This document shows positions 1 through 49,275 of a stretch of DNA of 64,000 nucleotides, in pieces. Positions within the stretch are counted from its first letter, which is position 1, and the number at the start of each line of letters is the position of its first letter. The stretch is from the NCBI GenBank assembly GCA_002269645.1, contig NIVC01000323.1, forward strand, positions 1-64,000, written 5' to 3'. The translations under genes and the position numbers were made by a program. Source of the DNA: Macrostomum lignano (taxonomy: Eukaryota). Under the pieces are notes generated by a model that did no database searches, was not told where the DNA came from, and saw only the letters and a program-made list of their open reading frames with translations.

Positions 1-768
1 GGTAGAAAGAAGGGGTGAGACAGGTGGATAGAATGGGTGAGACAGGTAGATAGAATGGGTGAGACAGGTAGATAGAAGAGTTGAAACAGGTAGATAGAAG
101 GGGTGAGACAGGTAGATAGAATGGGTGAGACAGGTAGATAAAAGGGGTGAGACAGGTAGATAGAAGGGGTGAGACAGGTAGATAGAATGGGTGGAACAGG
201 TAGATAGAATGGGTGAGAAAGGTAGATAGAAGGGGTGAGATGGGTAGATAGAAGGGGTGAGACAGATGAAGGGGTGAGACAGGTAGATAGAAGGGGTGAG
301 ACAGGTAGATAGAAGGGGTGAGACAGGTGGATAGAATGGATGAGACAGGTAGATAGAAGGGTTGAGACAGATAGATAGAAGGAGTGAGACAGGTAGATAG
401 AAGGGGTGAGACAGGTAGATAGAAGGGGTGAGACAGGTAGATAGAATGGTTGAGACAGGTAGATAGAAGGGGTGAGACAGGTGGATAGAATGGGTGAGAC
501 AGGTAGATAGAAGGGTTGAGACAGATAGATAGAAGGGGTGAGACAGGTAGATAGAATGGGTGAGACAGGTAGATAGAAGGGGTGAGACAGGTGGATAGAA
601 TGGGTGAGACAGGTAGATAGAAGGGTTGAGACAGATAGATAGAAGGGGTGAGACAGGTAGATAGAATGGGTGAGACAGGTAGATAGAAGGGGTGAGACAG
701 GTAGAAAGAAGGGGTGAGACAGGTAGATAGAAGGGGTGAGACAGGTAGCTAGAAGGGGTGAGACAGGA
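1..768. repeat. 22-bp purine-rich minisatellite (GGGTGAGACAGGTAGATAGAAG)n, runs off the window start
   Basis: About 35 direct tandem copies with point variants. Confidence 0.95.
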
Positions 769-1237
769 TGTAGCCCCAAAGAAGTAATATTTTGAATAAG
801 TAGATATTCATTTGCTAAAACAACCAAGATTTGTCTCCAATATAATCCGGTGAAAAAATACGCTACAAAATATCCATATAAAGCATTCAAACGAAATTAA
901 CGACAGCTAAATAATTAGATTTTACATCAACAGGTTAGTAAAGACTGAAACAAAAAAGTAAAAAGGAAAAAATACCTACAGGTTAGACATTGAAACCTTT
1001 CGAAAGAGATTTAACCTTTCGCTCAACTTAATTAATCATCTTAATCTTTTGGTGGCCAGCGCTACAGTATAAACAACAAATTCTTGAGCTTGTTCAGAAA
1101 TACACTCGTGATTAAATTGATTTGACAGAAGATTTCTAAAATTAAAACAAACAGCCTCTTCTAAAACGAGGAACTTTTTAGTTTTTGGCTTAAAAGTTAA
1201 TCAACCCACATGTTTGTTGAGTCAGTAGTTTTAAAGT

Positions 1238-4200
1238 TTAGTTCCGTTTCAGCAGCTCAATAATCGAATCCAGCTTGCTGTCCAACTCTTTGATTTTGCG
1301 TCGCTGCTGTCTCAGCCGAGAGGTAGTCTTTCGGTAGCGACTGTCATCGGGACCGGCGTCTGGCCCTGGCTCAACCGTTGATGTCGCCGCTCGAAGCTCG
1401 GCAGTCAGTCTCGCTTCTAGAGCTCGAAGCTTATCGTCGATAACAGCTTCCGGAACCAAATTTGAGAAAGCCTGTCGGAAGTGGCAGGCACCTGTTGCTG
1501 CTGCTCCCGAACTTGCACGCCCTGCGCCAGACTCTCTTCAACCTTGTCTAGCCGCCCTGTCAGCCTTTGAGAAGTCTCTTCCTGTCGGTCAGCCATGGCA
1601 CCCAGCCTCGAGTCGAGTTGCTCCTGCAGCGTGTCCATCAGGTTGCCAGTGTGCGCTTTCAATCCGTCGAAGTCGCTTCGATTGCGGGTCACCTCTCGGC
1701 TAAGCTGAGGCCGGCAACGCCGGAAGCGAGTGGCCTGGAACCTCAAGAAGCTGACGTACTCGTCTGGGTAGTCGCTTTCGTTAAGCCACCATTCCTGAAA
1801 CGTTTTTTGAGGTTAGGAATCGTTTTGAGTTCTTTTTTAATTTCCCGTTTAGTTCCAACAAAAATTGAATTCAATTTAGACACGTCGACATTCGATTTGA
1901 TTATACTACTTCACGCCATGTGGTTAAATTTTTTAATTAGAAAAGTCGTCTGTGCAAAGGCCAATGTCATAGGCTGTGGAAAAAGTTGCCCGTCTCTTCG
2001 GCTTACGTTAAAAACATATAAGCATTACGCCTGATATTAAGCTTTCTAGCTTGAGATATCAGCCTCGTCTTCGAGCCTTTGCATCTTAGTAAATCCCTCT
2101 TGGTATCTTGTAATCGAATGGATAGATATGGAACGGATCATACATGATATGCATGCATCAAATTCGCACTATTCCTACGAAGTTTTGAATCCCAAGACTT
2201 ACACTTTTATCGGTAGGTTGCACTCTTGCGCCTCGAACAAACCGCATGATAGGAAGAACAATCTCGCTGATGAAGGACACAGGCGGTGGCAAGGGCCCAA
2301 GGGTCTGGTACTCGCGCAGCATCTCAAAGTAGGTCCTACGCCAAATTCCCAGAGCCCGACTGTCCATTCGACTGACTCGAAGGCTGAACAACGCAATCAA
2401 CAGGTTCACCATGACGATGTTCACCAGGAAAAGGAATACAAATAACAGTAAGTTTTTGAACCACGCTAATCCCTGAGGATGCGCCACTTTGCCAATTGTT
2501 TGGTTGACCGTGGCAGACGACGGCTCCAACGAAGTAGTGTCGAAGGTAGTGAACAATAAGTTAAACGGCAGAGTAAAAACCTGTAGTATCACCTTCCAAG
2601 CGTAGCCGCTACCATTCATCTCTGAGGCTGGGGAGAAGATCACGGGAAGAGTAGATTGAAGAACAGCACACCGAAGACGTAAAATATTATCATCACAATT
2701 GCCAAAAATGGCAGGAGGTCGAGAATTAGCAGACTGCTCAGCATGGAGATGACTGGTCCAGTTCTTTCATGATAGCTGAGGAAAGCGACAGATCGAAATC
2801 CCCACAGAGTGAAAGATATAGTTAGCATCATTTGGCACGCATAAGTTGTGTTACTGTCTTCGACTACGTAGAAGATTATCCACTTCCAGAACAGTCCGAT
2901 CCATAGAAACAGGATGGCGAAGCAATCAAATAAGTTAATCGCATCCTGGAAGTACGATGGGCATCTGATTATTCGTTTATTGACATAGAAGTTTTTCAAG
3001 GCTCTGCGGCGCCAAAAATCTGCAAATTCCTGCACAGTGTAGGAGGCTGCGTACAAAGATAGCAGGATGTCCGGGATCACGGTGTAGAAAGTCATTTTGA
3101 AGTCTAGAATGTACCAGGCTGCGTAGGCCAAGAAGATGACGAAAGCGACGTGGTGAATGTAGAACTTCACTTTGGGAGTGAACGGATCAGTAAAGCGTTT
3201 TTTCTTGCCGCTGGCCTCCGTGTACTGCGGCCTCGGGTGCCAGGCTTTCCGGGCGACATTGTGCATGCAGTCAGTTTCAATTAGCTCGCTGCAGTCGGAC
3301 TCTTCCACCATGTCGAACAGGGTGATGTACTCGAAGGAGGATCTGTCTGCATTGTCAGCGCACCTGCACGGGAACATAGGTCCAGGATTTTCTCCGTTAT
3401 TGTCTCTTAGGTCGCCGCGGATGTAGTCAATCAACAGGTTCCTTTCCTCTTCGCTGGCTGACATATATAGATCGTCTAAAGCGTTAACCACTATGCAGAT
3501 AATCTTGCCCTGGAGCTCCTTTAGCTGCTCGAGCCTGCCCTGTCTCTGGGCGATTTTCGGCTTGAGATAGACCAGCAAACTAATGCAAGCCGGAATTAGT
3601 TCAAATTGGCGGGTCAGAATCAAGTCAGGCAAGATGTTCATCTTGTCGAAGAAGGCGGCAACGTCAATCACCAATAGCTCAGAGACTACGCTAAAGAGCT
3701 TTTGGTTCAAAAACTCTTCGGATTTGTCGAAGTAGCGATTACTGTCATATGTGTCAGAATTTAGCTTCTGGGCTAAGTACATCGGCAGACACCTTTCCGT
3801 GTCTGAAGTGACCAGATTCAAGCTGAAGGCACTTCTTAAGATACGTGACGAGTCCAGTTCGATAGCTCTGAGCAATACGTCCCAGTCTGTGCGGCTGACG
3901 TCTTTTTTTGCCACTGCAACCGCAGTTTCAGGCGGCTTCTCCGATAGACTCACAGCTGATCCTCGTCGTTTGCTTGGCTTGTCGTCGCAGACGCTATGGG
4001 AATCCCCTCTTGGGCCTTCCACTCTCAGCGATTCGTGGGCGATTGAGGCAATCAGCTGACGAGAATTCGATCTGTCTGGAAGCTTCAGTGCTCTTTGAGC
4101 AGGATCCACTAGGCGCCATAGATCGGTCATTGTCAGGCCTTTCTGACAATCTTCGGCAACCTCCAGCACCTCGTCGAGTTTTCCTTTCTCATAGGCATAG

Positions 4201-6137
4201 TCGATGCAGGACATGCCGCTGTGGGTCACGTTCTGCAGCAACAGACCTTGCCGAAGTAAGTATCGAATATTCGCCTTGTTGCCAGCTTCGCAGGCAAAAT
4301 GCAGACACGTGGCTCCCTTGTTGGCGTCCATGGTTACTGTTAAGCGCAGCAGGTCGGGCACCTGCAGCTCCGACAGCTTTGCCAGAGGCTTGACAATCTC
4401 GCGCAGCCGATATCGACCAGCAAAGGCGTGAATGGCGTGCAAGCCGCTGGAGTTATTGAGCAATTGCTTGAACATTTTCTTATAGGTATCAAAAGTTGCG
4501 GCTTTCATCATGATGAGTGCGAGGCACCTTTCGAGCATTGTTGTACTGTGCAGGCAGTTCTGACCTACATTGTTCTCACAGACTAGGCGAACACCCGATT
4601 TAACTAGCGTATTCATCATGGACAAGAATTCCTGAATCTCATTGTCGCTGTGTCGGTGCTTCTCGCTCTGGAACAGCGAATGCAGCAGCGTGTTTCCGTC
4701 ACCATCGACTCGAAGAATCTCCGCCGGAGCCATCTTCAGCAGGTGACTGGCAGCCGAGGCGCTGCACGAACTGACGGCCAGGTACAGAACAGTCTGTTTC
4801 TTGTTATTTTGCCAGCCGAGACACCACCAACCGACAGTTTGAGCAGCTTTGAGGACGATTTCGATCTTGCTGTCGCTGCGTACGGCTTCGTGCAAGCAGG
4901 TGTTGCCATCTTCATCGCGTAAGCTCAAACAGTCTGAATCTGCTTCTTGCACCAGCTTCTTGCAGAGCTCGGTGCTGCATGTCAACACAGCGTGGTACAG
5001 GACCGATTGCTTCTTGGCGTTCTGCCAGGTCAAACACTCGGGTCCAATAGTGTCCAAGGCGGCTGAAAGTATCTCCTCTTTGTTGTTGTCAATCATGTGC
5101 AAACAGGTGCTACCGATTTCATTGCGCAAGCTTAGCGTTTCTGAGCCAGCCAGGGCCACGAGTTTCTTGCCGACCTCGACGCTGCAAGACTCTAGGATCC
5201 GGTGCAAGACGGACTGCTTGCGATAGTTCTGCCAGCCCAGACACTCCGGTCCAGCAGCTTCAATCGCAGCAAAGATTACTGCTTCATCGCGATTGTCGGC
5301 GGCATAGTGGGCCCAAGAATTTCCTTCCTCGTCTTTTAAAGCCAGCAACTCGGAACCGGCCTGCGCCAGCAGCCGCTCTGCGGTTGCCGCATCGCAAGTG
5401 GCCATCGCCTCGCTCAGCACGGTGCGTCTTCTAGCATTCAGCCAGCCAAGGCACTGCTGGCCAATCGCTTCTAAGTAAGCGAGGAGGGCATCTTTGCTCC
5501 GGCGATTCCTGGCAGCCCAATGAGCGCAGGTGTCTCCGTTGGCGTCCTTCTGTTCGAGGACTTTTCGCTTTACCTGGCTAAACAGCGGAGCCAAGCTCTT
5601 GCCCGAGTGGTAGCGGGAGGCGAAGTGCAAAGGCGTCATCTTGGCCTTGTCCGACTCGGTCAGACTGTCAATTCCGACCAGATTAATCAGCAATTGAAGC
5701 GTTTCCTGACCTTTTGAGTGCATAGCAGCGTAGTGGATGAGAGTTCGCCTAGTGCGTTGGTCGCGTTCCAGCGTTAAGGTTGAAGTCCCGGAGCCGGCAA
5801 GCTCCGTGAGCAGCCGGTTAGCCGTCTCGAACTCAAAGCTGCGAGCCAGACGAAGCAACCGCTGCGACAGCGGCAAGGCGGGCTGCTCTCCGTCAGCGCC
5901 GAGTACTAACTCGGCTGGTTGCTGCTCGCTGGTAGCTTGATTGTCTGTCTGCTCAATAAGATCCGACTCGTCCTTCCAGTAGTCCTCGATCTCTTTGTCT
6001 TCATCGTCTTCTGAGTCATCGGCCTCTCTGTCGGACTGGACTGATGAGCCGCTGGCGTCCTCGCCCGTTAAATTGGCCTCGGATTCGTCTTCAGATTTTT
6101 CGGCGCGCTCATTTAGTTCGGATGCTTTGAGCGACAT
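1238..6137 (-). CDS. TRP-family cation channel with ~15 N-terminal ankyrin repeats and a TRPM-like transmembrane/TRP-box region; ~1,497 aa if two 1-nt frameshifts are corrected
   Basis: Exon 1 6137-2203: ankyrin motifs (TPLHFA, TCLHEA, TCLHFAC); S1-S5 helices; a frameshift at the CCC run 2644-2646 joins LLFP to VIFSPA; S6 NLLIALFS; TRP helix WRRTYFEMLREY..PLPPP. Intron 2202-1795 has a GTAAGT donor and TTTCAG acceptor, phase 0 (QPTDKS|EWWLNESDY). Exon 2 1794-1238 has a coiled-coil tail and a second frameshift at 1458-1463. Confidence 0.88.
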
Positions 6138-12157: not shown

Positions 12158-18470
<6,313 letters not shown>

Positions 18471-21935: not shown

Positions 21936-22340
21936 TTATGATAGTGAACGATATTTTTTGTGTGACGTTACATATTTAGAACTGGTGAAGTTTTTAAGCT
22001 TTTAGGTGGTCTTTTCTTTCGATTTGCAAATTTAAGCAGCATAAGCACAGCGAGTATTGAAGAAATGAAATCAAATCTGAGGTCTTTAGTGACTTTAGCT
22101 GGGAGTTAAAATCATAGATACAACTGTAAAGAATCAAGGCATCGAAGCGAAGCTTCATGGCACAACATTTCTTCTGGTTGATATCATTGCCGCAGTAGAG
22201 TTATTTGAAACCTTGATAAGCGCATCAAAAACTACTGCAATTTTCAGCTCATAAAAAATCTAGGATTCGAAATGCGAAGTGATCAGGAGCGATTCGGTTT
22301 TTGAATATGCTGCTACTTCTTCGTGCCAGCATATTCTCTT

Positions 22341-23935
22341 CTAGGTCGGGGGTTGATCCTCTTCAGCGACAGGCTTCTTCCTCCCTGGCAAGCCTGTTGG
22401 TCCTCCTCGCCTTAACACAGAAGCTCTTCTGGCGCTCAACCGGGAGCTGGGCGAGGCAAAGGTACCCCCAGACTCCGTCAGCGTAGTGGGCGACCGCGCG
22501 CACCGTGGCGATGTGGGCAATGTGAGCACCTCGAAAGGGGCGCCGCCGCTGCGCGTGGCCAGAGCCGCAAGCAGGCGTCTGCGGGCGGTCATGCGGCGTC
22601 TCAAGTCTGCAGCGTGTTGGGCGAAGGTTAGCTGGCCGTCCAGTTTGACTCCGAGGAAGACCGGGTAAGCCTCATAGGAGAGTGGTTGGCCGCCGATGTA
22701 GAGCACTTTGCCATTGCTCTCGCTGGGGGCTAGGGAGAAGGTGGTGAAACAGCATTTACTGATACTCGGCTCTACTTTCTACCGGACACACCAGTTGAAG
22801 GCCGCGTTCAGGGCGGGCTAGAGGAGCTTGGAGCTCGGCACAACGAGGTAGTGATAGTGCGGTGCTGAGGAGGGCTAAGTCGTCGTTGTAGAGGCTGAGG
22901 CCGGCATTCGGGGCGGCGTTAGCGAAATCCGCGGCGAGGTCGTTAACATAGACATTCCAGAGCGTCGGGGTGATAACACTTCCCTTTCCTGGCTAACGAC
23001 GGCGTTCCAGTTTACTCAGGCCCGGCGCTGCCAGAGGAAGCCGCGGACCCATCGGACGAGTCGGCGGCCGATCCCTAAGCGCAGCAGCTTAGCGTACAGG
23101 GCCCGGCCCCAGACTCTATTGTACGCCCAGCTGAAGTCCAGCAGAGCCAGGATGCTCCGCAGCGGCGTCTTGTTTTCCAGGCCATCAAAGATATCCTGCA
23201 CACGCGGGCGATGTTCCTCGCAGCTGCAGCGGAAGCCGGCCTGGCAGGCTGAGAGCTTGTTCTGGGACTCCAGCATCCAGTTGAGTCTCGCCAGAATCAG
23301 GCGTTCGGCGGATCTGCAGCTACTGCACCAGTTGTCTCTATCCAAAGGATTCCGGGTGGCAGCACGCCAGCAGGAGAGGCTGGTCGGCGTCGCGCGGAGC
23401 GACGGGCTGCGCCGTAGACGGCGGCTGAGTTGGGGGCCGGGCCGGTAAACCGGGCCTGCAGGCTGCGGGGTGGAGTCGTTGGGAACTCCGTCGCAGCGGA
23501 CGGCGATGACATCGCCCAGTGGTGGGCAGAAATCCTCGGCCGGCTTGAGTTTTGCCTCTTGGAGTAGGACTCCCGCAGGACGCGCGGTTTCCAGCCGAGA
23601 GCTTAGTTCCGGATAGCGGCTGTGGATGCCGTCAAAATTGAACCGCATGAACGGGAACTCTGGGCTCCGTGTGTCTCCGGGAGGCGGCGTACGGCGTCAG
23701 CATTTGCCGCGTCTGCGTCCTGTGGTGTCGTTTTCTGCTCCACCCCTGCGAAGGCGCAGGACACAATGGAGGTTTTCTGGCTCGGCGGGCGGCGTTTTTT
23801 CGGAAGGTCTGTGCTGGTGCGGACCATTTGTCGTTCCCAGGTCGGGGCCTGAGTCCAGGGGCCCCCGGGGCTTCGACTGATTGTTCATGTCAGTAGAAGT
23901 CGCTTCGAGGAGGGTGTCCACAAGCCCCCGTTGTG

Positions 23936-23993
<58 letters not shown>

Positions 23994-23995
23994 CT
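22341..23995 (-). mobile_element. Degenerate, internally deleted non-LTR retrotransposon (APE start + RT fragments; I/R1/Ingi-like group)
   Basis: FNFDGIHSRYPELSSRL..VLLQEAKL (endonuclease start); QAGFR..LLDFSWAYNRVW; VLSPTLWNVYVNDL; LYNDDLAL (YADD equivalent); YPVFLGVKLDGQLTFAQH. Multiple frameshifts. Confidence 0.88.
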
Positions 23996-24005
23996 GTTGT
24001 TGTTG
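23935..24005. repeat. (CAG/CAA)n microsatellite, 23 triplets on the minus strand
   Basis: Direct reading. Confidence 0.95.
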
Positions 24006-25419
24006 GCTGCGGAGTGCGGCAAGCTAGAGGGGTATCCAGCCGATCTCCCCCAAGAGCCGCGCCACCAGTTGACCATTGGTGAGGTCCTTCAGTCCAGTAA
24101 TTCCAATCTGACGTCGAGCCCCATCAAGGGCCGGGCAGCTGACCAGGTGGTACTGTTCCACCTCCAGGCCGCATCGAGCACAGGTAGCGTGGTCTAGTTG
24201 TGGTCCGATCCTGCACTGAAAGTAGACCGACTTGGGACAGTGGCCAGCACGAACTTGAGCCACCATGGTCTGCTGTAGTCTCGTTCCCGAATGGAAGGTC
24301 AAACAGCTGCCGTAGATGTCTTTCAGATGGCCGCTGAGTTGCGGCTCATAGCGAACATGCTTTCTGATCTAACACTTCGCTGCACCCAGGGTAACGGGGA
24401 CAAGATTCTGGTCCAGTTGAGCTGCTTTCTTCGCTTCAAGGTCGACGAGCTCGTTACCATGAATGCCGGCATGCCCCGGGACCCACTGGATGTCAATCCT
24501 GACGTCAATCCTCTTTCAGCCGAGAGAAGATCGCGCTTCAAGTTTTCCAGGAGCACATTGAGGGTGGGCCTGTCAGCGGCCAGCCCTCTCACAGCCGACT
24601 GGCTGTCGGTCAGAAGGCAGGCAGAGGACGGTCGGTGCTCAATAATGTCGGCAACGGCAGCCTGAAGGGCAATCAGCTCAGTCTCGTACGAGGAGCACCA
24701 ACGGCCCGCAGGCAGCCGGCCAGCACGAACAGGTTGCCCGGTGTGCTCGGTCAGCATGATCCAGGCCGCACCCCCGCACTCACTGCCCCCCGTAGCCGAG
24801 CCATCAGTATAGTACAGGCAGTCTGCAAGATGGCGCTTAAGCGTATGATTGATGACCTCCTGAAGCCTCAGGTTGTTCTGACGGTCACTCCACGTGCTCA
24901 TCAAGTCCGAGCAGAGCCGAATGTTCTGACCTGTGAGGCAGAGCCACGGTGGCGTGCGAATCCAGTCGTTAGGACGTCTGGGCATGTTCAGGAACCCGCT
25001 GGTGATTTCACGAGCTTGTTCACGCAGTCCTCTGTTGGCTTTTAACCGAACAGTCATCTGCCTTTCACACACAGCCCGCCAGGGATCATTGTCCGGACGC
25101 TTGAGGGCTTTTTCGACCGCAATGAGGGCCCTTCTCTTGGCTTCCGTGCTGATCGGAATACATCCGGCTTCTTTGTAGAGCGCCTCACACGGGGTGGATT
25201 TCGGCAGACCGGTGATCAGGCGGAGAGCTTCCCGTTGCGAGCGATCAAGGGCATCGAGCTTAGATTTGGACAGCCACGGCATCCAGGCAGCCGCCGCGTG
25301 CCACACAATTGCTTCAACCACGGCTTTGTAGACACCCGGCAGCATGGTGGCGCTCCAGCCCCACTCTTTGTTGGACAGGGCGCGGATGATAGACATTCTT
25401 CGCTGCATCTTACGGTGTC
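24006..25419 (-). mobile_element. 5'-truncated LINE: RT thumb, RNase H and C-terminal Cys/His motif
   Basis: IRALSNKEWG..ALRLITG; YYTDGS..ETELIAL..LTDSQSA..QWVPGHAGIHGNELVD; CARCGLEVEQYHLVSCP. One frameshift and one stop. Flanked by identical CAACAACAAC 10-mers. Confidence 0.92.
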
Positions 25420-25699
25420 GTTGTTGTTGCCAGTACCCCCTAGAGAAAGATTCGCTCACTCCTGTTCCGCACCATGCGCTCTGTACCAATTCCAGAAACT
25501 CGGGGCCTCTTCCAGTTTGTCCTGTAGGTCCTTTAGATTTAACAATCCGGCCGCTTCCCTTTTTCTCTAGGTGGCCAGGCAATACAAAACGTGCTCAATT
25601 AACTCTTCCTCCTTATTGCGCATCCTACACCTATCGCTCGAACTTCTTCCAATTCTCTTGCAGTAGCTTTGCAGTTCCCGGAAGTGTCCTGTCCTCATC

Positions 25700-25960
25700 C
25701 GTCCGCCCTACCTGGCCGCCAGATCGCAACGTTGTTCCAGACGATGGTCGAGACCGTCCTGCTGTGCGACGCCGAGACCTGGACGCTGACGTGCTCCCTT
25801 GATCAACAAGTAGACGCGGTGCACGCTGGCCTACTGCGCGCCACCTTCAAGATCTGCGACAAGCGGGTCACCAATGCGACACTGTAATGCCACGCCGTCC
25901 TGGTTCGTCCAAGCGACCTTTTGCACCGTTGGCAACTCCAGCCGGCAGACCGCATTATCC
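25700..25960 (+). mobile_element. RTE-like LINE fragment (RT thumb region), degenerate
   Basis: IATLFQTMVETVLLCDAETWTLT..LLRATFKI..RVTNATL resembles the LLY.AETWTL motif of RTE-clade elements. Confidence 0.7.
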
Positions 25961-28319
25961 CAAAGTCCTAATTTGGTAGTAATGCCCAAAGCCGGTGCAG
26001 CGATCTGCGGCGTGGCATTTCGGCCGTTCAGGGATTAGCGGAGTGGGCATCCGCACCTTTCCGCTGTGTCCCCTCCGGGACAGGCCTGCAGCTAAGTTAA
26101 GTAAGTCAAGCGGCGTGGCCTTCGTTTACGACCTAGCCCAGTCCTTTCTAAAGACTGACAGCGTATTTTGTTGTTGTTGCTGGACGCCAACCATTTCCAT
26201 AGCTTGCAAGACTAGCTCTGCAGCTAAAAAGTTTTTGGTCTTAAGAGTCGGCGGTAGCTTCTACTCCAAAGGACGAGTTTTTCAATAAGAAAATTGTATT
26301 TTGAGGCCATAAAACCTGGCGAGCAGCAAGATTCAGCTTCCATCTGGAGACAAGCCTATCGTAATGGCAAAAATGCAACTTCAGTCTGACGTACCCATGC
26401 TAGACTGTTTAAGAGATCTGTTTAGCATCTAATGTCTTTGCGATTCTAATAATACTACTTCTCTAAGTCGGAAAGTAGCACGAGTATGATATCCGTTTTA
26501 TTTTTTTTTGCAAATCTATTTTGTATGCATGAGTTCTATTAAGAGATCAGAAAGCATGACCTCAGATAATAAGCTTCCTAAGATGCATTTTCACCCTAAG
26601 CCATCTCTCTCCCTCTCTCACAGTCATCCAAGTCAACTGTTACACTGGATTGCTCAAAAAATAGCATTTTGTGTATAATTATTCTCGCACCTACTGAAGA
26701 TTCACCTTCGTGAATAATTTAGGCTGTGCAGCAGCCGGTTGGGAATCGGTTCCGCAATATTATAGCTACATGCGAGTACAGGGAGAGAGAATCAATCGAT
26801 TTTCAATGCCCTGCTACCGCATACGCGGTCTCTTCTGATGTAATTCAATATAATAATGCGCGTACGGCAGGCGGGGGAGGCTGCAGATGAAGGAGAGAAT
26901 AATTCAACAAGCCTATATGAGCATCTTCCAGCAGAGAGTAAGCCAGGGGTTAATAACCATGCATGGCTACCAGCGCATTATGCAGAGGCCTAGTAGAAGG
27001 AGTTGTAAGAAATCAATAAGCCCTGCTGAAAAGTGTATCGACTATATTCTGCCGGGCGTTATACTAATGCTGTCACATCCATGCACCAATGAAGCTGTTT
27101 CTTGTCTTTTACAGTTGCTATAGCTAGGGAGTAAGTCGTTTACACCACACGAAGCTCTCGCCTCAGTGCTATAAGTTGCGGCAAAGTAGTATGCATATGC
27201 ATACAGTGTTTGAATAATTCATTATTAACTCAAACTCGTGTTGATGGTTGGTTGTCGCTTGCGTCCACTTGGGCTGGACTATCTATAATCCATATTTTAT
27301 ATGATTGTGCACGCTTTCTAACTATTATAGTTGTGCATAGGACTTAATGATGAGTTTATGCATTCTAGAAGTAAATGTTTCTCACCTTTAAGTAGGCGGA
27401 CAGAGGGTAAATTATAAATCGAACAATTTACTGACGAATTGGTGTATTAATTTGTGAATTTCTAAAGCGTCTTATGTGATTTTTTTTAACTACTTTTGAT
27501 TTGCCAAAAGTCTTCTGTCTGTCGCCGTTGCAGTTGTAATTGATGAATGTTTATTAACAGTTGGGCGAATCATCTCAGTTGCTAATATTAACAAAGGAAC
27601 GCTACTACCTTAAGTTGTTAAACCAACTTCAACCCATGTACATAGATCAGATAAAGCTGTACCCATGCTCGAGAGTTGCCTCTTGGATATTTGTAAAATG
27701 GGTTGTTGAAGAGCATCTGTAGCTGGCGCCCCTCTGTCCTCTTTAGCAATATTCACTTTGATCCAAAACTGAATATCCCGACTTGTCTTTAGGGGCTAAA
27801 GAAACTTGACATTTCTACAGCACATGAAGCTCAACAATCCTGATCAATCCCACTTTACGGGAATTGACGGCTATAGCCAACTGGTCAGCAGCGCCACAGA
27901 GGGGAAGACAAGGCTGGACACGGGCTGGCCCAATGCTTCAACTCATAATGGCCACAGGCGCGCAGGCGTTGAAAGGCAAGGCGCCGCTGTAACTTTTATT
28001 ATTAATAATTCAATCCTCATCGCCATGGCACGGCAGAGGCGGCTGCAGTCAGGTGCTGGGAGGCCAATAAAACGTTCAGCTGGCTAGTAAATTCCCCAAA
28101 CTTCTGAGCGCCTGTTCCCCCCCCCCTGCGGCGCTCATTAGCTGCAGTTACGCGATTGGGAAGTGTTCAGGAAACTGCCTTGGGCTGCATCATGAGCTGC
28201 CAAGTGGTCCATGCTAGACACTTGTGAATGCGTTAAAGTTAGAATTTTAGGTAATTTTTACGCTTTGGTTGAATTTTACTGCTTTGACTGCTCTATGAAT
28301 TCCTGTAAAGTGCTTCTGC

Positions 28320-29502: not shown

Positions 29503-30823
29503 CACTGAAACTCCAGCTTGGCGCCCCACTAAAACTCCAGCTTGGCGCCTCACTAAAACTCCAGCTTGGCGCCTCACTAAAACTCCAGCTTGGCGCCTCA
29601 CTAAAACTCCAGATTGGCGCCCCACTAAAACTCCAGCTTGGCGCCTCACTAAAACTCCAGCTTGGCGCCTCACTGAAACTCCAGCTTGGCGCCTCACTAA
29701 AACTCCAGCTTGGCGCCTCACTGAAACTCCAGCTTGGCGCCTCACTGAAACTCCAGCTTGGCGCCTCACTAAAACTCCAGCTTGGCGCCTCACTAAAACT
29801 CCAGCTTGGCGCCTCACTAAAACTCCAGCTTGGCGCCTCACTAAAACTCCAGATTGGCGCCCCACTAAAACTCCAGCTTGGCGCCTCACTAAAACTCCAG
29901 CTTGGCGCCTCACTAAAAATCCAGATTGGCGCCTCACTAAAACTCCAGCTTGGCGCCTCACTAAAACTCCAGATTGGCGCCTCACTAAAACTCCAGCTTG
30001 GCGCCCCACTAAAACTCCAGCTTGGCGCCCCTTTAAAACTCCAGATTGGCGCCTCACTAAAACTCCAGATTGGCGCCTCACTAAAAATCCAGATTGGCGC
30101 CTCACTAAAACTCCAGCTTGGCGCCCCTTTAAAACTCCAGATTGGCGCCTCACTAAAAATCCAGATTGGCGCCTCACTAAAACTCCAGATTGGCGCCTCA
30201 CTAAAACTCCAGATTGGCGCCTCACTAAAACTCCAGATTGGCGCCCCACTAAAACTCCAGCTTGGCGCCCCTTTAAAACTCCAGATTGGCGCCTCACTAA
30301 AACTCCAGATTGGCGCCTCACTAAAACTCCAGATTGGCGCCTCACTAAAAATCCAGATTGGCGCCTCACTAAAACTCCAGATTGGCGCCTCACTAAAACT
30401 CCAGATTGGCGCCTCACTAAAAATCCAGATTGGCGCCTCACTAAAACTCCAGATTGGCGCCTCACTAAAACTCCAGATTGGCGCCTCACTAAAACTCCAG
30501 CTTGGCGCCCCACTAAAACTCCAGATTGGCGCCTCACTAAAACTCCAGATTGGCGCCTCACTTAAAATCCAGATTGGCGCCTCACTAAAACTCCAGATTG
30601 GCGCCTCACTAAAACTCCAGATTGGCGCCTCACTAAAACTCCAGATTGGCGCCTCACTAAAACTCCAGCTTGGCGCCTCACTAAAAATCCAGATTGGCGC
30701 CTCACTAAAACTCCAGCTTGGCGCCTCACTAAAACTCCAGCTTGGCGCCTCACTAAAACTCCAGATTGGCGCCTCACTAAAACTCCAGATTGGCGCCTCA
30801 CTAAATCTCTAGATTGGCGCCCC
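29503..30823. repeat. 24-bp minisatellite (ACTAAAACTCCAG[C/A]TTGGCGCCTC)n, ~55 copies
   Basis: Tandem copies; explains the TKTPAWRL-type ORFs. Confidence 0.97.
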
Positions 30824-37424: not shown

Positions 37425-39300
37425 ACGCTGTGTAGTTTGTAAATTGTGTAGTTTTTGAATTGTGTAGTTTGTTAATTGTGTAGTTTGTGACTTGTGTAGT
37501 TTGTGACTTATGTAGTTTGTGACTTATGTAGTTTGTGACTTATGTAGTTTGTGAATTGTGTAGTTTGTGAATTGTGTAGTTTGTGACTTGTGTAGTTTGT
37601 GACTTATGTAGTTTGTGACTTATGTAGTTTGTGACTTATGTAGTTTGTGACTTGTGTAGTTTGTGACTTGTGTAGTTTGTGAATTGTGTAGTTTGTGAAT
37701 TGTGTAGTTTGTGAATTGTGTAGTTTGTGAATTGTGTAGTTTGTGACTTGTGTAGTTTGTGACTTGTGTCGTTTGTGACTTATGTAGTTTGTGACTTATG
37801 TAGTTTGTGACTTATGTAGTTTGTGACTTATGTAGTTTGTGAATTGTGTAGTTTGTGAATTGTGTAGTTTGTGAATTGTGTAGTTTGTGAATTGTGTAGT
37901 TTGTGACTTGTGTAGTTTGTGACTTATGTAGTTTGTGACTTATGTAGTTTGTGAATTGTGTAGTTTGTGACTTGTGTAGTTTGTGAATTGTGTAGTTTGT
38001 GAATTGTGTAGTTTGTGACTTGTGTAGTTTGTGAATTGTGTAGTCTCTGAATTGTGTAGTTTGTGAATTGTGTAGTTTGTGACTTGTGTAGTCTGTGATT
38101 TGTGTAGTTTGTGAATTGTGTAGTTTGTAAATTGTGTAGTTTGTGAATTGTGTAGTTTGTGACTTGTGTAGTTTGTGACTTGTGTAGTCTGTTATTTGTG
38201 TAGTTTGTGAATTGTGTAGTCTGTGACTTGTGTAGTTTGTGATTTGTGTAGTTTGTGAATTGTGTAGTCTGTGAATTGTGTAGTCTCTGAATTGTGTAGT
38301 TTGTGAATTGTGTAGTTTGTGACTTGTGTAGTTTGTGAATTGTGTAGTCTGTGAATTGTGTAGTCTGTGACTTATGTAGTTTGTGACTTATGTAGTTTGT
38401 GACTTATGTAGTTTGTGAATTGTGTAGTTTGTGAATTGTGTAGTTTGTGACTTGTGTAGTTTGTGACTTGTGTAGTTTGTGACTTGTGTAGTCTCTGAAT
38501 TGTGTAGTTTGTGAATTGTGTAGTTTGTGACTTGTGTAGTCTGTGACTTGTGTAGTTTGTGACTTGTGTAGTTTGTGACTTGTGTAGTCTGTTATTTGTG
38601 TAGTTTGTGAATTGTGTAGTCTGTGAATTGTGTAGTTTGTGAATTGTGTAGTTTGTGAATTGTGTAGTCTGTGACTTGTGTAGTTTGTGATTTGTGTAGT
38701 TTGTGAATTGTGTAGTCTGTGAATTGTGTAGTCTGTGACTTGTGTAGTTTGTGAATTGTGTAGTTTGTGAATTGTGTAGTTTGTGAATTGTGTAGTCTGT
38801 GACTTGTGTAGTTTGTGAATTGTGTAGTTTGTGAATTGTGTAGTTTGTGACTTGTGTAGTTTGTGACTTGTGTAGTTTGTGAATTGTGTAGTTTGTGACT
38901 TGTGTAGTTTGTGAATTGTGTAGTTTGTGACTTGTGTAGTTTGTGACTTGTGTAGTTTGTGAATTGTGTAGTTTGTGACTTGTGTAGTCTGTGAATTGTG
39001 TAGTTTTTTAACTTTGTAGTCTGTGAATTGTATAGTTTCTGAAGTGTCTAGTATTTTTAATTATGTTGTTTGTGAATGTGTAGTTTGTGACTTGTGTAGT
39101 TTGTGAATTGTGTAGTTTGTGACTTGTGTAGTTTGTGAATTGTGTAGTTTGTGACTTGTGTAGTCTGTGAATTGTGTAGTTTTTTAACTTTGTAGTCTGT
39201 GAATTGTATAGTTTCTGAAGTGTCTAGTATTTTTAATTATGTTGTTTGTGAATGTGTAGTCTGTGAATTTTGTAGCTTGTTAATTTTGTAGTTTGCCAAG
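37425..39300. repeat. 16-bp minisatellite (TTGTGTAGTTTGTGA[A/C])n, >110 copies
   Basis: Tandem copies; terminal ~176-bp block duplicated. Confidence 0.97.
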
Positions 39301-41420: not shown

Positions 41421-42683
41421 CTACCATGAAGTGAGCAGCTGTACAGAGAGTCTGAGCAGAAGCGGCGGTGCTGCTGCGAACGTTGCTGACAGGAGGAGCC
41501 GTGCTGCACCTTTGCCTTCATTGTTGCTACCCGCTTCACCGCCTCGAACTTGCAGCCTGGTCGAGTCGAACCAGGTGCTCTCGGCCTCTTGAGCCGGGTC
41601 CGAAGTCTTAAACGGTGGCGAGTCGAAGCTGGAGCTGGGCTCAGCGCAGGCGTCGACGCACGGCTGCGGACGGCACTGTGGGCTGCAGTCGTGCAGTAGG
41701 CTCCTGTCGAAGGTGACGAACCTGGGCGAGAAGCCGTACCACCGAGACCAGTCGCGCCGGTTAGCGAAGCTGGCGGTCTGACAGCTGCATGGAAAGAAAG
41801 TTGCAGTCAGGTTGAGGCCGCGCAAGCTTCTCGCCTGACCGATGGCGCACAGGTCGAGCTGGCGAAGGATGTTACCGCGCAGGTACAGGGCCACCAAGCC
41901 GCCGCCGTCTTGAACGCCGACGGACGAGTCAGCCGATTGCGGCGAGGTCAAACCGCAGAACGCTCGCCTCTGGATGACTAAGTCCCTCTGCAGGGCGCCT
42001 AGGTCGAGAATGATGAGCTTTCTCAAACCGTGAAACGCATTGTCGGGTATGGTGGAGATTTTGTTGAACTGCAGATAGAGATTCATCAGGTTGGTGAGCT
42101 GTCGGATTCCGGGCGGCACCTCCGTGATGTAGTTGTGGCTGAGGTAGAGTTTGGCAATGAACGCGGTGTGCCGAAACGCGCCGAGGGCCACCGTCTTGAT
42201 GAGATTATTGTGAAGCACGAGCTCGCGAAGCGACGGCAGGTCTCTAAGATCTTCGTTGCCGAGGCTGGACAGCAGGTTGTGCGACAGGTTCAAGGACTCC
42301 ACGCCAAGCAGTCCCTGGAACGCGCCCGGTTGAATCTCGCGAACCAGCGAGCTGGTAACCTCGACTCGTCGGACATTGAGAACACCCCAGTGGAACTGCA
42401 GAGTCAGCTGAGTCATCGCGTGTTCTCGAACTCGGAGCTCGTGAAAATTGTACGACCATCGAGTCTCGCGGTTGCTGGGCACAAAGTAGGGCACTCGGTC
42501 CAGGTAGTTCAGAGACTCGCTCTCGCGCTGAACGCACTTGATCCGCAGGTCGGTGCACTGGCAGGGAGCCTGCGCTGGACACGGCGGCTTGGAGGCGGCC
42601 CTGATAGCCAGTAGGAGACAGCAGACGGTCAGGCTGGCGAGACGCCGGAACCAGAAACCGCTGTTCATGCAGGAGCAACGCAT
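41421..42683 (-). CDS. Extracellular leucine-rich-repeat protein (signal peptide, LRRNT, ~8-9 LRRs, LRRCT), probably GPI-anchored; 420 aa, intronless
   Basis: CPAQAPCQC N-cap; LxLxxNxI/L repeats (LNLSHNLL, LVLHNNLI, LYLSHNYI, LYLQFNKI); FPCSC C-cap; Ser/Pro-rich stalk; hydrophobic C-terminus after NEGKG. Confidence 0.92.
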   Translation of the reverse strand: MRCSCMNSGFWFRRLASLTVCCLLLAIRAASKPPCPAQAPCQCTDLRIKCVQRESESLNYLDRVPYFVPSNRETRWSYNFHELRVREHAMTQLTLQFHWGVLNVRRVEVTSSLVREIQPGAFQGLLGVESLNLSHNLLSSLGNEDLRDLPSLRELVLHNNLIKTVALGAFRHTAFIAKLYLSHNYITEVPPGIRQLTNLMNLYLQFNKISTIPDNAFHGLRKLIILDLGALQRDLVIQRRAFCGLTSPQSADSSVGVQDGGGLVALYLRGNILRQLDLCAIGQARSLRGLNLTATFFPCSCQTASFANRRDWSRWYGFSPRFVTFDRSLLHDCSPQCRPQPCVDACAEPSSSFDSPPFKTSDPAQEAESTWFDSTRLQVRGGEAGSNNEGKGAARLLLSATFAAAPPLLLRLSVQLLTSW

Positions 42684-42912: not shown

Positions 42913-43289
42913 GCGAACTGGGACCGATAGACCCAAGCTTTGCCTTGCCTCTCTTGCCTCTAGGAGAAGCGAATGGTGTCGCTTTGACTGTACGCAGAGG
43001 GACTATTGGGGTGTCAATCACAGTGAGAGAAAAAGAGAGAGAGGCGGGTTTGTGTTGATTGCTGAGGTTCCGCTATGATTGCGGCTATTGGTTTCCGTGC
43101 GTCTTCCTGCATCCAGCTGCCCCTGGCTGATGATGCCCGCCTTAATGCGTCATCATCCGCTTTCTGCAAGAGCTGCCCAGCGACTCCCCATCTGCGTAAG
43201 AGGACAGATGAGCGGGGTATAAACACTTAATGTTGCTTCAAGAATAAAATTATCTTCTTCGCGGTAGAATATGTATCTTCATTATATAG

Positions 43290-44001
<712 letters not shown>

Positions 44002-46500: not shown

Positions 46501-47174
46501 TTGAATTGGCGCGCTAAACTCAGTTTGTTAATTATAAAATTCTACAAACTAAGCTAAAATTTGGTTACTTTTGTAAGAATAAGAATTTGTATTTTTAGAC
46601 CGAGTAGAAAATGTTAGCTGGTATAGTGAAATAAAAATTTCTTCACACCTACGTGAACATCTAATCATGAACATTAAGATAAGAGAGAAATTTCGGTTTT
46701 TATTTAACGAATCTCTCACAATCGTAGCAGCCGTTTGTCATTATTTATTTCTCACCTTGGCTCTTGGGAGCTTGGTCGTAAAATTTAACTACCGAGTAAT
46801 TATAATAAAACTTCTTCGCTATATCTCAAACCCAGTGCTAGAGATGACAATGATAGCCTGCGAAGCCTGGTTTTGGTGCGGCAGCCATAAAGTTAATTGT
46901 CGCATTTTTATCTATTTTTTCAGTTGGTTTTATTGCAAAATAATTTCTAAGAGTTTTGTTGCTATTTGAGGCGGGGCTTCGTACGTGGCAAAACGTTGAA
47001 GATGATCAAAGTAAAAGAATGAGAGGGTTCTTGAGTTGGGCCAGGGGAGCTCTGAAGGCACAGGTGGAGCAGACGAGGGATGCTTTCACAAGCTCGAAAT
47101 TTCACAACGTCGAAAATTTAATATAGCAAGAACCTAGCCAGATCGTTTTCAAAGAATAACTTTGGTATATTTAG

Positions 47175-48930: not shown

Positions 48931-49275
48931 ATAGAAAATAAATTGCAGAACCGTCTTCAACCATATTGGTCTCTTGAGTATTTTATTCGCCAGCAAATAT
49001 CAAAGAAATTGTTTTTCATTGCTATATGAAAATATACCTTGAAAAGTTTTAATACAGCAACTTTTATTCTTGGCTGGTTTTCATTGAGTTACAAACATTT
49101 TTGTGTGGTTGCAAAGTTATGGCCCCTTCAAAAACACCAGTTTCTATTAGATGAAGAATTTTCATGCAGCACAACATTTATAAAATTTTTCTCTGATTTT
49201 AGAGAATTTCGGGATTGCGAGATCCCGTGATCATAAAACTCCGCGATTTTGGCATCTCTTCAGAATAGACGTGTT

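What the first reader, a model, noticed from the sequence alone, without database searches (positions are those of the whole stretch)
1238..6137. Chimeric TRP channel: TRPA-like ankyrin array on a TRPM-like channel core
Seen: ~15 ankyrin repeats followed by a core whose motifs read as melastatin-type. These are an MHR4-like linker ending TLFDMVEESDCSELIETDCMHNVARKAW, pre-S1 TPKVKFYIHHVAFVIFL, S4-S5 HERTGPVISML, S6 NLLIALFS, TRP helix WRRTYFEMLREY..PLPPPVSF, and a C-terminal coiled coil. Established: TRPA/C/V/N carry ankyrin repeats, whereas TRPM channels have MHR1-4 (SLOG-containing) N-termini instead. Inference: MHR1-3 was replaced by an ankyrin array, giving a non-canonical TRP class. I have an unverified recollection that ankyrin-bearing TRPM-like channels have been noted in flatworms, so novelty needs checking.
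Basis: partly seen in the sequence, partly recalled or inferred. Interest (0 to 1): 0.75.

Follow-up and report, generated by a model that had tools for sequence, protein, structure and literature searches.

The report
Flatworm ankyrin-bearing TRPM-like channel gene
This is a Macrostomum lignano (free-living flatworm) ion-channel gene with about 16 ankyrin repeats fused to a melastatin-type TRP channel core, an architecture already described in parasitic flatworms as the meclonazepam target TRPM_MCLZ, so it is an uncharacterised relative of a known kind and not a new channel class.

Summary
On the minus strand, 6137 to 1238, lies a gene for a 1497-aa protein. It has an acidic tail, about 16 ankyrin repeats, an MHR4-like helical linker, a TRPM-type S1-S6 core with TRP helix, and C-terminal long helices. 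The window is the start of Macrostomum lignano contig NIVC01000323.1.

The core is melastatin-type:
- Every top match among solved structures is a TRPM, by sequence and by fold.
- A TRPA1-like protein scores below zero against the family profile.
- No SLOG/MHR1-2 domain is present.

The architecture is not new. Schistosome TRPM_MCLZ (Smp_333650) and its orthologues are published as ankyrin-bearing "TRPM-like" channels that lack SLOG. I tied those orthologues to this gene's relatives through the published S4 residues H946 and Y944. The window gene belongs to a separate sister subclade that is strongly expanded in M. lignano (at least 20 clusters at 50% identity).

Both breaks sit in homopolymer runs. 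A 99%-identical second copy and two UniProt models read through them, so they are most likely assembly errors.

Nothing supports a TRPA origin for the ankyrin array. Verdict: a new member of a known kind, of modest interest.

The parts
5874..6137 (-). Start codon and an acidic N-terminal tail predicted to be disordered (aa 1-88).
   Evidence: ORF start. pLDDT is below 50 over aa 15-86.
4143..5870 (-). Ankyrin-repeat solenoid of about 16 repeats (aa ~90-665). Much of it has a 70-aa double-repeat periodicity.
   Evidence: Pfam Ank_2 9e-24, Ank_4 6e-19, Ank 1e-12. The AF2 model shows 16 helix pairs at pLDDT 85-92. Foldseek hits are NOMPC, ankyrin-R/B, DARPins and fly TRPA1.
3213..3890 (-). Helical linker between the ankyrin array and pre-S1 (aa ~750-975). 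Its C-terminal part, aa 839-974 (window 3216-3623), is MHR4-like and ends in ...TDCMHNVARKAW.
   Evidence: hhalign of the family linker against canonical TRPM MHR3/4: 80.8% probability, E=1.3e-5, 110 columns. Against the TRPM_MCLZ-group linker: 96%, E=4e-9. The region is collinear from the last ankyrin repeat to the pre-S1 W: 98.3%, E=2e-14, 325 columns. Foldseek alignments to TRPM chains span about 700-770 of the 742 query residues. Pfam PF25508 does not reach threshold on this protein itself.
2643..3182 (-). Pre-S1 and S1-S5 (aa 986-1165). Includes the candidate Ca2+ site of the voltage-sensor-like domain: E1037 and D1040 in S2 (QEFADF), N1068 and D1071 in S3 (NLFD).
   Evidence: phmmer alignments to Nematostella and zebrafish TRPM2. 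MAFFT alignment with fish TRPM2 and TRPM_MCLZ orthologues. AF2 helices at 988-1011, 1020-1045, 1062-1090, 1096-1120 and 1127-1163.
2644..2646 (-). Frame break 1. The C-run is CCC here and CCCC in the second genomic copy. It creates the TGA at 2642-2640, directly after ...FGVLFFNLLFP.
   Evidence: Sequence. Comparison with L003. Intact P0015 and P0160 read NLLFPVIFSPASEM. All paralogues read through the site.
2203..2643 (-). Rest of coding exon 1, in the shifted frame (aa 1166-1312). Holds the pore helix and filter (LPFNLLFTTFD), S6 (VNIVMVNLLIALFS), the TRP helix (GIWRRTYFEMLREY) and the PLPPPVSF motif.
   Evidence: ORF2. Pfam Ion_trans C-terminal part. Alignments to TRPM2.
1795..2202 (-). Intron of 408 nt, GTAAGT...TTTCAG, phase 0.
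   Evidence: Splice-site motifs. The junction ...QPTDKS|EWWLNES... is identical in the intact protein models P0015 and P0160.
1238..1794 (-). Last coding exon. Conserved post-TRP segment (WW..DYPDEYVSFLRFQATRFRR), long C-terminal helices or coiled coil, and the TAA stop at 1240-1238.
   Evidence: Family alignment. AF2 helices 652-671 and 682-741 of the core model. The C-terminal KELDSKLDSIIELLK motif is shared with paralogue P0005.
1461..1463 (-). Frame break 2. The A-run is AAA here and AAAA in the second genomic copy.
   Evidence: Intact models read ...DRLSQNLVPEAV....

Best explanation
The locus encodes a subunit of a tetrameric TRP cation channel of the flatworm-specific, ankyrin-bearing "TRPM-like" clade. 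The frame-restored protein is 1497 aa.

Layout, N to C:
- an acidic tail
- an ankyrin solenoid of about 16 repeats where canonical TRPMs carry the SLOG/MHR1-2 domain
- an MHR4-like helical linker
- a TRPM-type voltage-sensor-like domain (S1-S4)
- the pore (S5, pore helix, S6)
- a TRP helix followed by the TRPM-typical EY...PxPPP motif
- C-terminal rib and coiled-coil helices

Shown here: the architecture, the TRPM affinity of core and linker, the absence of SLOG, and clade membership next to TRPM_MCLZ orthologues.

Inferred: it assembles as a tetramer through the coiled coil and conducts cations. Gating is modulated by Ca2+ bound at the conserved S2/S3/TRP-helix site (E1037, D1040, N1068, D1071, and the Glu of the TRP-helix REY motif). 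Activating stimuli probably act through the S1-S4 pocket, as meclonazepam does in TRPM_MCLZ and menthol does in TRPM8. The ankyrin array would serve as a cytoplasmic docking or force- and ligand-coupling module.

The gene is one of a large Macrostomum-specific expansion, which suggests a sensory receptor repertoire.

The two frame breaks in this copy are most likely homopolymer-length errors of the long-read assembly, not real inactivation.
For: Source and gene model:
- ORF1 is found exactly on M. lignano contig NIVC01000323.1 of GCA_002269645.1.
- The frame-restored protein is 1497 aa. It differs at only 6 residues from UniRef A0A1I8HUA9 (P0160, 1497 aa) and is 98.3% identical to A0A1I8HN98 (P0015).

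Core type:
- PDB phmmer: nvTRPM2 1.1e-16, drTRPM2 6e-16, and TRPM1/3/4/7 at 1e-12 to 1e-10, against NOMPC at 1.4e-5 and TRPV2 at 0.07.
- The top 50 Foldseek hits are all TRPM, with TM-score about 0.5 over about 700-770 columns.
- A group-1-only transmembrane HMM scores TRPM_MCLZ orthologues at 125-133 bits, canonical TRPMs at 82-125 bits and a TRPA1-like protein at -6.6 bits.

N-terminus:
- Ankyrin repeats by Pfam and 16 modelled repeats.
- No LSDAT/SLOG by Pfam or by a local iterated profile.

Linker:
- hhalign to TRPM MHR4: E=1.3e-5. To the TRPM_MCLZ-group linker: E=4e-9 to 2e-14, collinear from the last ankyrin repeat onwards.
- Group-2 relatives carry Pfam PF25508 (the TRPM MHR3/4 domain) above threshold, together with ankyrin repeats.

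Clade:
- NJ tree of 280 core columns and 109 sequences. The window's group has 99% bootstrap. All ankyrin-bearing, SLOG-less sequences separate from all SLOG-bearing TRPMs at 85%.
- Group 2 is TRPM_MCLZ. S. guineensis has H946 and S. mekongi has Y944 at the aligned S4 site, exactly as published for S. mansoni and S. japonicum (PMC12861061).
- Opisthorchis models carry two copies of the last-exon region, as published.

Frame breaks as artefacts:
- Both are one-base-short homopolymers relative to a 99.0%-identical second copy, L003.
- L003 has two different one-base indels of its own.
- Over the 3' 3.4 kb the two copies differ by 5 single-base indels and only 1 substitution.
- In the 5' 541 codons, differing codons are 14 synonymous against 7 non-synonymous.
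Against: - No functional, expression or read-level data for this gene were available.
- Pfam does not detect PF25508 or TRPM_tetra in this protein itself. The direct MHR4 match reaches only 80.8% probability.
- The tree is neighbour-joining on corrected p-distances. It lacks TRPC, TRPN, TRPV and TRPS reference sequences, so the position of the ankyrin-bearing clade relative to TRPM and TRPS is unrooted.
- The group-1 profile scores a Limulus TRPM (125 bits) almost as high as TRPM_MCLZ orthologues.
- The pore filter (FTTFD) and the TRP helix (WRRTYF in place of WKFQRY) diverge from characterised TRPMs, so selectivity and gating cannot be read off.
- The frame breaks could be real in this copy.
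Confidence: 0.8

Rival explanations
1. This particular copy is a real, recently inactivated pseudogene. Two genuine one-base deletions truncate the channel after S5.
For: As deposited, the sequence has a TGA at 2642-2640 and a second frameshift at 1461-1463. NCBI's own model for the locus stops at 1165 aa (P0158). M. lignano carries many redundant gene copies, so loss of one copy would be tolerated.
Against: Both lesions are homopolymer length differences. The sister copy in the same assembly has two other one-base indels at different sites. Over 3.4 kb the copies differ by 5 indels and only 1 substitution, which is an error signature and not a mutational one. No stop codon arises from a substitution. 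Everything downstream stays open and conserved. Models from the independent ML2 assembly are intact.
Confidence: 0.15
2. The ankyrin-bearing flatworm clade is not a TRPM whose SLOG was replaced. It is an old, separate TRP lineage that branched before or near the TRPM-TRPS split and kept the ancestral ankyrin repeats.
For: All SLOG-less ankyrin-bearing sequences form one bipartition apart from every SLOG-bearing sequence (85%). The attachment point is unsupported (4% for the next split). Other group-1 TRP families all carry ankyrin repeats, and MHR3/4 are themselves said to contain degenerate ankyrin repeats (PMC13143021, PMC7306681).
Against: Every ankyrin-bearing core hit of known taxonomy is a flatworm. 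That favours a flatworm-specific innovation. [quoted passage not shown] Group 2 retains a threshold-passing TRPM MHR3/4 domain.
Confidence: 0.15
3. A true TRPA/TRPM chimera. The ankyrin array was acquired by exon shuffling from a TRPA or TRPN gene.
For: The repeat number (about 16) resembles that of TRPA1. NOMPC and fly TRPA1 are among the Foldseek hits for the N-terminal model.
Against: The same search returns ankyrin-R/B, DARPins, tankyrase and latrotoxins at comparable scores, so the match is generic to long ankyrin solenoids. No TRPA-specific linker or transmembrane similarity exists. The array and the core share one exon with no seam.
Confidence: 0.04
4. The ankyrin part and the channel part are two adjacent genes that were read together by mistake.
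For: Several database models of paralogues are fragments, annotated as either ANK_REP_REGION or Ion_trans only.
Against: One uninterrupted 1165-codon ORF spans the ankyrin repeats, the linker and S1-S5. More than ten full-length paralogues and the TRPM_MCLZ orthologues have the same layout. TRPM_MCLZ has been expressed as one functional protein (PMC10788528).
Confidence: 0.01

Closest known systems
TRPM_MCLZ (Schistosoma mansoni Smp_333650) and its orthologues in trematodes and cestodes: the "TRPM-like" group of Park et al. 2024 (PMC10788528), Sprague et al. 2024 (PMC11731825) and Rohr et al. 2026 (PMC12861061)
   Same: - N-terminal ankyrin repeats where canonical TRPMs have SLOG/MHR1-2.
- The layout is collinear from the last ankyrin repeat through an MHR4-like linker to pre-S1 (98.3%, E=2e-14).
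- TRPM-type S1-S6, with S6 NLLIALFS identical.
- TRP helix followed by EY...PPP.
- Conserved ExxQ/D and NxxD residues in S2 and S3.
- Few exons.
- The two group together against SLOG-bearing TRPMs (85%).
   Different: - The window gene is not an orthologue. It sits in a separate, 99%-supported subclade. M. lignano has closer TRPM_MCLZ-type paralogues (P0050, P0051, P0055, P0057, P0068).
- Core identity is only about 25-30%.
- The ankyrin array is longer: about 16 repeats, with about 985 aa before S1 against about 820-850 aa.
- Pfam PF25508 is not detectable.
- The TRP helix reads WRRTYF against W-L-A-x-RY.
- The filter region reads LLFTTFD against FYSIFEVS.
- The S4 position of H946 is Ala.
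- Ligand sensitivity is unknown.
Canonical TRPM channels (TRPM2, TRPM3, TRPM4, TRPM7, TRPM8; nvTRPM2, PDB 6co7)
   Same: They are the best sequence and fold matches for linker, S1-S6, TRP helix and rib helix. The positions of the voltage-sensor-like-domain Ca2+ site are conserved. An MHR4-like linker is present. There is a C-terminal long helix or coiled coil.
   Different: There is no SLOG/MHR1-2 and no clear MHR3. An ankyrin solenoid takes their place. There is no NUDT9H or kinase domain. TRPM_tetra is not detected by Pfam. Filter and TRP box are divergent.
TRPA1 and TRPN (NOMPC)
   Same: A long N-terminal ankyrin solenoid (14-29 repeats) in front of a six-helix TRP channel. NOMPC and fly TRPA1 are structural hits for the N-terminal model.
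   Different: Transmembrane core similarity is far weaker (NOMPC 1.4e-5) or absent (TRPA1-like, -6.6 bits). The linker is MHR4-like and not a TRPA or TRPN linker. The TRP helix and PPP motif are melastatin-type.
TRPS (soromelastatin, ced-11-like)
   Same: It is the sister family of TRPM, with a related core (PMC7306681).
   Different: TRPS carries SLOG and Nudix and has no ankyrin repeats (PMC7306681). It was not separately identified among my hits, so the relationship is untested.

Membership tests
Canonical TRPM | N-terminal SLOG/MHR1-2 domain (Pfam LSDAT_euk, PF18139). | tested here: not met
   No hit at E<=1. A local iterated SLOG profile finds 41 canonical hits but none in this family.
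Canonical TRPM | MHR3/MHR4 region (Pfam PF25508, TRPM2-like domain) adjoining pre-S1. | tested here: inconclusive
   Pfam gives no hit on the window protein. hhalign of the family linker to the TRPM MHR4 part: 80.8%, E=1.3e-5, 110 columns. Some paralogues are detected at 1e-5 to 1e-10. Foldseek alignments cover the linker. Only an MHR4-like part is supported.
Canonical TRPM | Melastatin-type S1-S6 core with TRP helix and EY...P.PPP motif. | tested here: met
Canonical TRPM | C-terminal tetramerising coiled coil (Pfam TRPM_tetra). | tested here: inconclusive
   Pfam TRPM_tetra is not detected. Long C-terminal helices are predicted.
Flatworm ankyrin-bearing TRPM-like group (TRPM_MCLZ clade) | Ankyrin repeats at the N-terminus in place of SLOG, on a TRPM-like core. 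| tested here: met
   The definition comes from PMC11731825 and PMC12861061.
Flatworm ankyrin-bearing TRPM-like group (TRPM_MCLZ clade) | The core and linker group with TRPM_MCLZ orthologues, apart from SLOG-bearing TRPMs. | tested here: met
   NJ bipartition at 85%. Linker and N-terminal hhalign: 96-98.3%, E=4e-9 to 2e-14. NJ only, with no outgroup.
Flatworm ankyrin-bearing TRPM-like group (TRPM_MCLZ clade) | One-to-one orthology with Smp_333650. | tested here: not met
   The window gene lies in a separate 99%-supported subclade. Other M. lignano genes are closer to TRPM_MCLZ. The S4 H946-equivalent residue is Ala.
Flatworm ankyrin-bearing TRPM-like group (TRPM_MCLZ clade) | Ca2+-permeable cation channel opened by a ligand in the S1-S4 pocket. 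| not testable with these tools
   Needs expression and electrophysiology.
TRPA | TRPA-type transmembrane core and linker behind the ankyrin array. | tested here: not met
   A TRPA1-like protein (P0261) scores -6.6 bits, E=9, against the family core HMM. No TRPA1 chain appears among the 60 PDB sequence rows shown, which run down to E about 0.075.
TRPN (NOMPC) | TRPN-type core behind about 29 ankyrin repeats. | tested here: not met
   NOMPC core similarity is 1.4e-5, against 1e-16 for TRPM. There are about 16 repeats.
TRPC | Four ankyrin repeats, a TRP_2 or linker helical domain, and an EWKFAR TRP box. | tested here: not met
   No TRPC chain appears among the 60 PDB sequence rows shown, which run down to E about 0.075. 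No TRP_2 domain. The TRP box reads IWRRTYF.

The most novel reading that the evidence does not exclude
The window gene's subclade (group 1) would be an unnamed TRP subfamily, sister to TRPM_MCLZ, that has radiated in Macrostomum. It has at least 20 clusters at 50% identity. One further member sits on a marine metagenome contig. Together with TRPM_MCLZ it would descend from a lineage that kept, or very early regained, ankyrin repeats. The clade would then sit outside crown TRPM (alpha, beta, gamma). That would contradict the published inference that ankyrin repeats were lost before the TRPM-TRPS split.
Probability: 0.12. Interest if true: 0.6.

Novelty: new member of a known kind. Interest (0 to 1): 0.3.

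Why it matters
The ankyrin-for-SLOG architecture is already a drug-target story in parasitic flatworms, where TRPM_MCLZ is the meclonazepam target.

This locus adds three things:
- A free-living model flatworm holds TRPM_MCLZ-type genes and also a much larger, divergent sister expansion with longer ankyrin arrays.
- The fusion of ankyrin array, MHR4-like linker and channel therefore predates the split of Macrostomorpha from the parasitic Neodermata.
- M. lignano is transgenic and RNAi-tractable, so it offers a system for asking what the ankyrin array does on a melastatin core.

It also qualifies the textbook statement that the TRPM/TRPS lineage lacks ankyrin repeats.

On the practical side, two copies of this gene in assembly Mlig_3_7 each carry single-base homopolymer indels that truncate the annotated gene models.

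Tried and rejected
1. Tiny GT..AG introns as an explanation for the frame breaks. A 20-nt GT..AG segment at site 2 would restore the frame. The intact protein models keep those residues (VPATSDRLSQ), so this was rejected. At site 1, the only GT..AG segment I could find of the length needed to restore the frame would delete conserved S5 residues.
2. Word-index homologue searches returned M. lignano proteins only. The exhaustive HMMER search was needed to reach other flatworms and the TRPMs.
3. Pfam on the window protein alone gave no TRPM-specific domain. Homology of the linker had to be shown through intermediate sequences and hhalign.
4. I could not obtain TRPC, TRPN, TRPV or TRPS reference sequences with the tools, so no rooted all-TRP tree was built. 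One TRPA1-like sequence (P0261) aligned too poorly to serve as an outgroup. No ML software was available, so only NJ with 100 bootstraps was run.
5. My local ankyrin profile under-counted the divergent repeats, finding 3 of about 16 in the window protein. The repeat count rests on the structure model.
6. The supplementary sequences of the TRPM_MCLZ papers are not held. The link to TRPM_MCLZ was made through the published residue numbers H946 and Y944.
7. Literature on TRPM evolution (PMC7306681, PMC13143021) does not cover these flatworm proteins.

Full report
**What is in the sequence**

The minus strand between 6137 and 1238 carries a 1165-codon ORF (6137-2640). Two further ORFs follow in other frames, at 2643-2158 and at 1746-1417 / 1459-1238.

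Reading the DNA shows three interruptions:
- ORF1 stops at a TGA (2642-2640) directly after the S5 sequence FGVLFFNLLFP. The protein continues one base out of frame as VIFSPASEMNGS...
- A GTAAGT...TTTCAG intron lies at 2202-1795 (408 nt, phase 0).
- A second one-base frame change lies at the A-run 1461-1463.

Pfam finds ankyrin repeats (Ank_2 9e-24, Ank_4 6e-19) and a weak Ion_trans match. It finds no SLOG/LSDAT, no PF25508 and no TRPM_tetra.

An AlphaFold2 model of ORF1 shows about 16 helix-pair repeats between aa 90 and 665 at pLDDT 85-92. These are followed by a disordered stretch (aa 704-748), a helical linker and the transmembrane helices.

**Where it comes from and whether it is broken**

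ORF1 is found exactly on Macrostomum lignano contig NIVC01000323.1 (assembly GCA_002269645.1), and the window is the start of that contig. The rest of the window fits an animal genome:
- an intronless DEG/ENaC gene
- an LRR gene
- a MOSC gene
- retroelement remnants
- many satellite arrays

The exhaustive protein search returned P0015 (UniRef A0A1I8HN98, 1488 aa). It is 98.3% identical to my conceptual protein over its whole length. It reads NLLFPVIFSPASEM across break 1 and DRLSQNLVPEAV across break 2. With one base restored at each break, the window protein is 1497 aa. It differs at 6 residues from UniRef A0A1I8HUA9 (P0160, 1497 aa).

A second genomic copy in the same assembly (L003, contig NIVC01000102.1) is 99.0% identical over 5.5 kb. 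It has CCCC where the window has CCC, and AAAA where the window has AAA. It carries two other one-base indels of its own, opposite window positions 4512 and 4343. These explain its truncated 895-aa annotation.

Over the 3' 3.4 kb the two copies differ by five single-base indels and one substitution. In the 5' 541 codons, the differing codons are 14 synonymous and 7 non-synonymous. This is the signature of residual homopolymer errors in a long-read assembly. I put the chance that this copy is a real pseudogene at about 0.15.

**What kind of channel it is**

The region from the linker to the post-TRP segment was searched against all solved structures. Nearly every one of the 60 rows shown is a TRPM:
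- Nematostella TRPM2, 1.1e-16
- zebrafish TRPM2, 6e-16
- TRPM1, TRPM3, TRPM4 and TRPM7, 1e-12 to 1e-10
- NOMPC, 1.4e-5
- TRPV2, 0.07
- no TRPC or TRPA among the rows shown

An AF2 model of the same region (pLDDT 68.6, pTM 0.61) gives 50 of 50 top Foldseek hits to TRPM3, TRPM7, TRPM4, TRPM2 and TRPM8. Alignments span about 700-770 columns for a 742-residue query, so they cover the linker, the core, the TRP helix and the C-terminal helix.

A profile built only from this gene's subfamily gives the following scores:
- TRPM_MCLZ orthologues, 125-133 bits
- canonical TRPMs, 82-125 bits
- a hemichordate TRPA1-like protein, -6.6 bits

The N-terminal model matches generic long ankyrin solenoids: NOMPC, ankyrin-R/B, DARPins, tankyrase and fly TRPA1. 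"TRPA-like" therefore describes only the repeat number.

**The family**

Word-index searches found only M. lignano paralogues. The exhaustive search found 1926 proteins at E<=0.001, which fall into a clear hierarchy.

- **Group 1** consists of full-length matches. There are about 20-25 representatives at 50% identity. All those with a named source are M. lignano, apart from one 1537-aa protein on a 5.1-kb contig binned as a Kangiellaceae MAG.
- **Group 2** matches mainly in the core, at about 1e-35 to 1e-27. It includes M. lignano, Schistocephalus and Dicrocoelium proteins. Of the four I scanned, all have ankyrin repeats and Ion_trans, and three also carry Pfam PF25508, the TRPM MHR3/4 domain, above threshold.
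- **Canonical TRPMs** follow, with SLOG.

An NJ tree of 280 core columns (109 sequences, 100 bootstraps) gives group 1 99% support. It separates all ankyrin-bearing, SLOG-less sequences from all SLOG-bearing ones at 85%.

Profile-profile comparison of the regions upstream of S1 gives:
- group 1 against canonical MHR3/4: 80.8%, E=1.3e-5
- group 1 against group 2: 96%, E=4e-9
- group 2 against canonical: 99.7%, E=5e-27

A longer comparison shows group 1 and group 2 collinear from the last ankyrin repeat to the pre-S1 tryptophan (98.3%, E=2e-14, 325 columns). This argues for a single origin of the fusion of ankyrin array, MHR4-like linker and channel.

**What is already known**

The schistosome meclonazepam target TRPM_MCLZ (Smp_333650) is described as a channel with a long N-terminal domain of ankyrin-like repeats (PMC10788528). 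It lacks MHR1/2 (SLOG) (PMC11731825). It is placed in a "TRPM-like" clade next to the other TRPMs and has orthologues in all parasitic flatworms (PMC12861061).

I tied group 2 to it in two ways:
- A search with the Dicrocoelium protein returned Schistosoma, Trichobilharzia, Opisthorchis, Fasciola, Echinococcus and Taenia orthologues of about 1375-1415 aa.
- At the aligned S4 position, S. guineensis has H946 and S. mekongi has Y944. These are the residue numbers published for S. mansoni and S. japonicum. The Opisthorchis viverrini model contains two core copies, which matches the published duplicated exon 3a/3b.

I did not find any description of the large Macrostomum group-1 expansion, or any treatment of free-living flatworms, in the library I searched. 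The TRPM evolution papers do not cover these proteins. One of them states that ankyrin repeats are absent from TRPM and TRPS (PMC7306681, PMC13143021).

**How it probably works (inference)**

The alignments place E1037 and D1040 (S2), N1068 and D1071 (S3), and the Glu of the TRP-helix REY motif at the positions of the TRPM2/4/5/8 Ca2+ site in the voltage-sensor-like domain. The S6 NLLIALF gate motif is conserved. The filter region (LLFTTFD) and the TRP box (IWRRTYF) are divergent.

I therefore expect a tetrameric, Ca2+-modulated cation channel that is gated through its S1-S4 pocket, with the ankyrin solenoid as a cytoplasmic interaction or coupling module. The many paralogues suggest a sensory repertoire. 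None of this was tested.

**Limits**

- The tree is NJ only and has no rooted all-TRP outgroups.
- TRPS was not separately identified.
- No reads or transcripts were available.
- The direct MHR4 match is moderate.

**Verdict**

The claims of novelty and of a TRPA origin are not supported. This is a new member of a known kind.

Noticed in passing
window 15219-16892 (+): An intronless 557-aa ORF encodes a DEG/ENaC (amiloride-sensitive sodium channel) family protein (Pfam ASC, E=1e-39). It is a second ion-channel gene 9 kb from the TRP gene.
   Followed up: partly
window 22000-26000 (ORFs 23016-23648 and 24323-25582, minus strand): A block of 57-58% GC in a genome region otherwise at about 44%. 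It holds weak reverse-transcriptase and RNase H matches and is probably a retroelement remnant.
   Followed up: partly
window 28300-55300: This stretch is packed with satellite and minisatellite arrays. Examples: TAGGA x353 at 47172-48934, a 16-mer x117 at 37429-39295, a 24-mer x55 at 29503-30821 and ATAG x179 at 43286-44000. They account for the extreme GC/AT-skew spikes and for several spurious long ORFs in the six-frame list.
   Followed up: partly
window 41421-42683 (-) and 57651-58790 (+): A 420-aa leucine-rich-repeat ORF (LRR_8, 8e-27) and a 379-aa ORF with MOSC_N and MOSC domains. Both look like ordinary single-exon genes.
   Followed up: no
L003 (NIVC01000102.1:667952-683048), positions 5821 and 5989: The second, 99%-identical copy of the TRP gene is intact at the window's two breaks. 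It has its own one-base insertion and one-base deletion, opposite window 4512 and 4343, and is annotated as a truncated 895-aa protein (PAA90889.1). Both copies of this gene in the Mlig_3_7 assembly therefore carry single-base indels that break their annotated gene models.
   Followed up: yes
P0027 / P0169 (5,106-bp metagenome contig; NCBI MEE4247282.1): A 1537-aa full-length member of the window gene's subclade is deposited as a protein of a "Kangiellaceae bacterium" MAG. It is almost certainly animal (flatworm-like) DNA mis-binned into a bacterial genome. It is also the only group-1 member whose recorded source is not M. lignano.
   Followed up: partly
P0037 (Opisthorchis viverrini T265_12782, 1906 aa): The gene model contains two channel-core copies (core matches spread over 686-1672) and two MHR-like matches. 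This fits the published alternative exons 3a/3b of TRPM_MCLZ having been merged into one model.
   Followed up: partly
window 1-1237: The window is the very start of contig NIVC01000323.1, so the stop codon at 1238-1240 lies only about 1.2 kb from the contig end, which limits the 3' context available for this gene.
   Followed up: no
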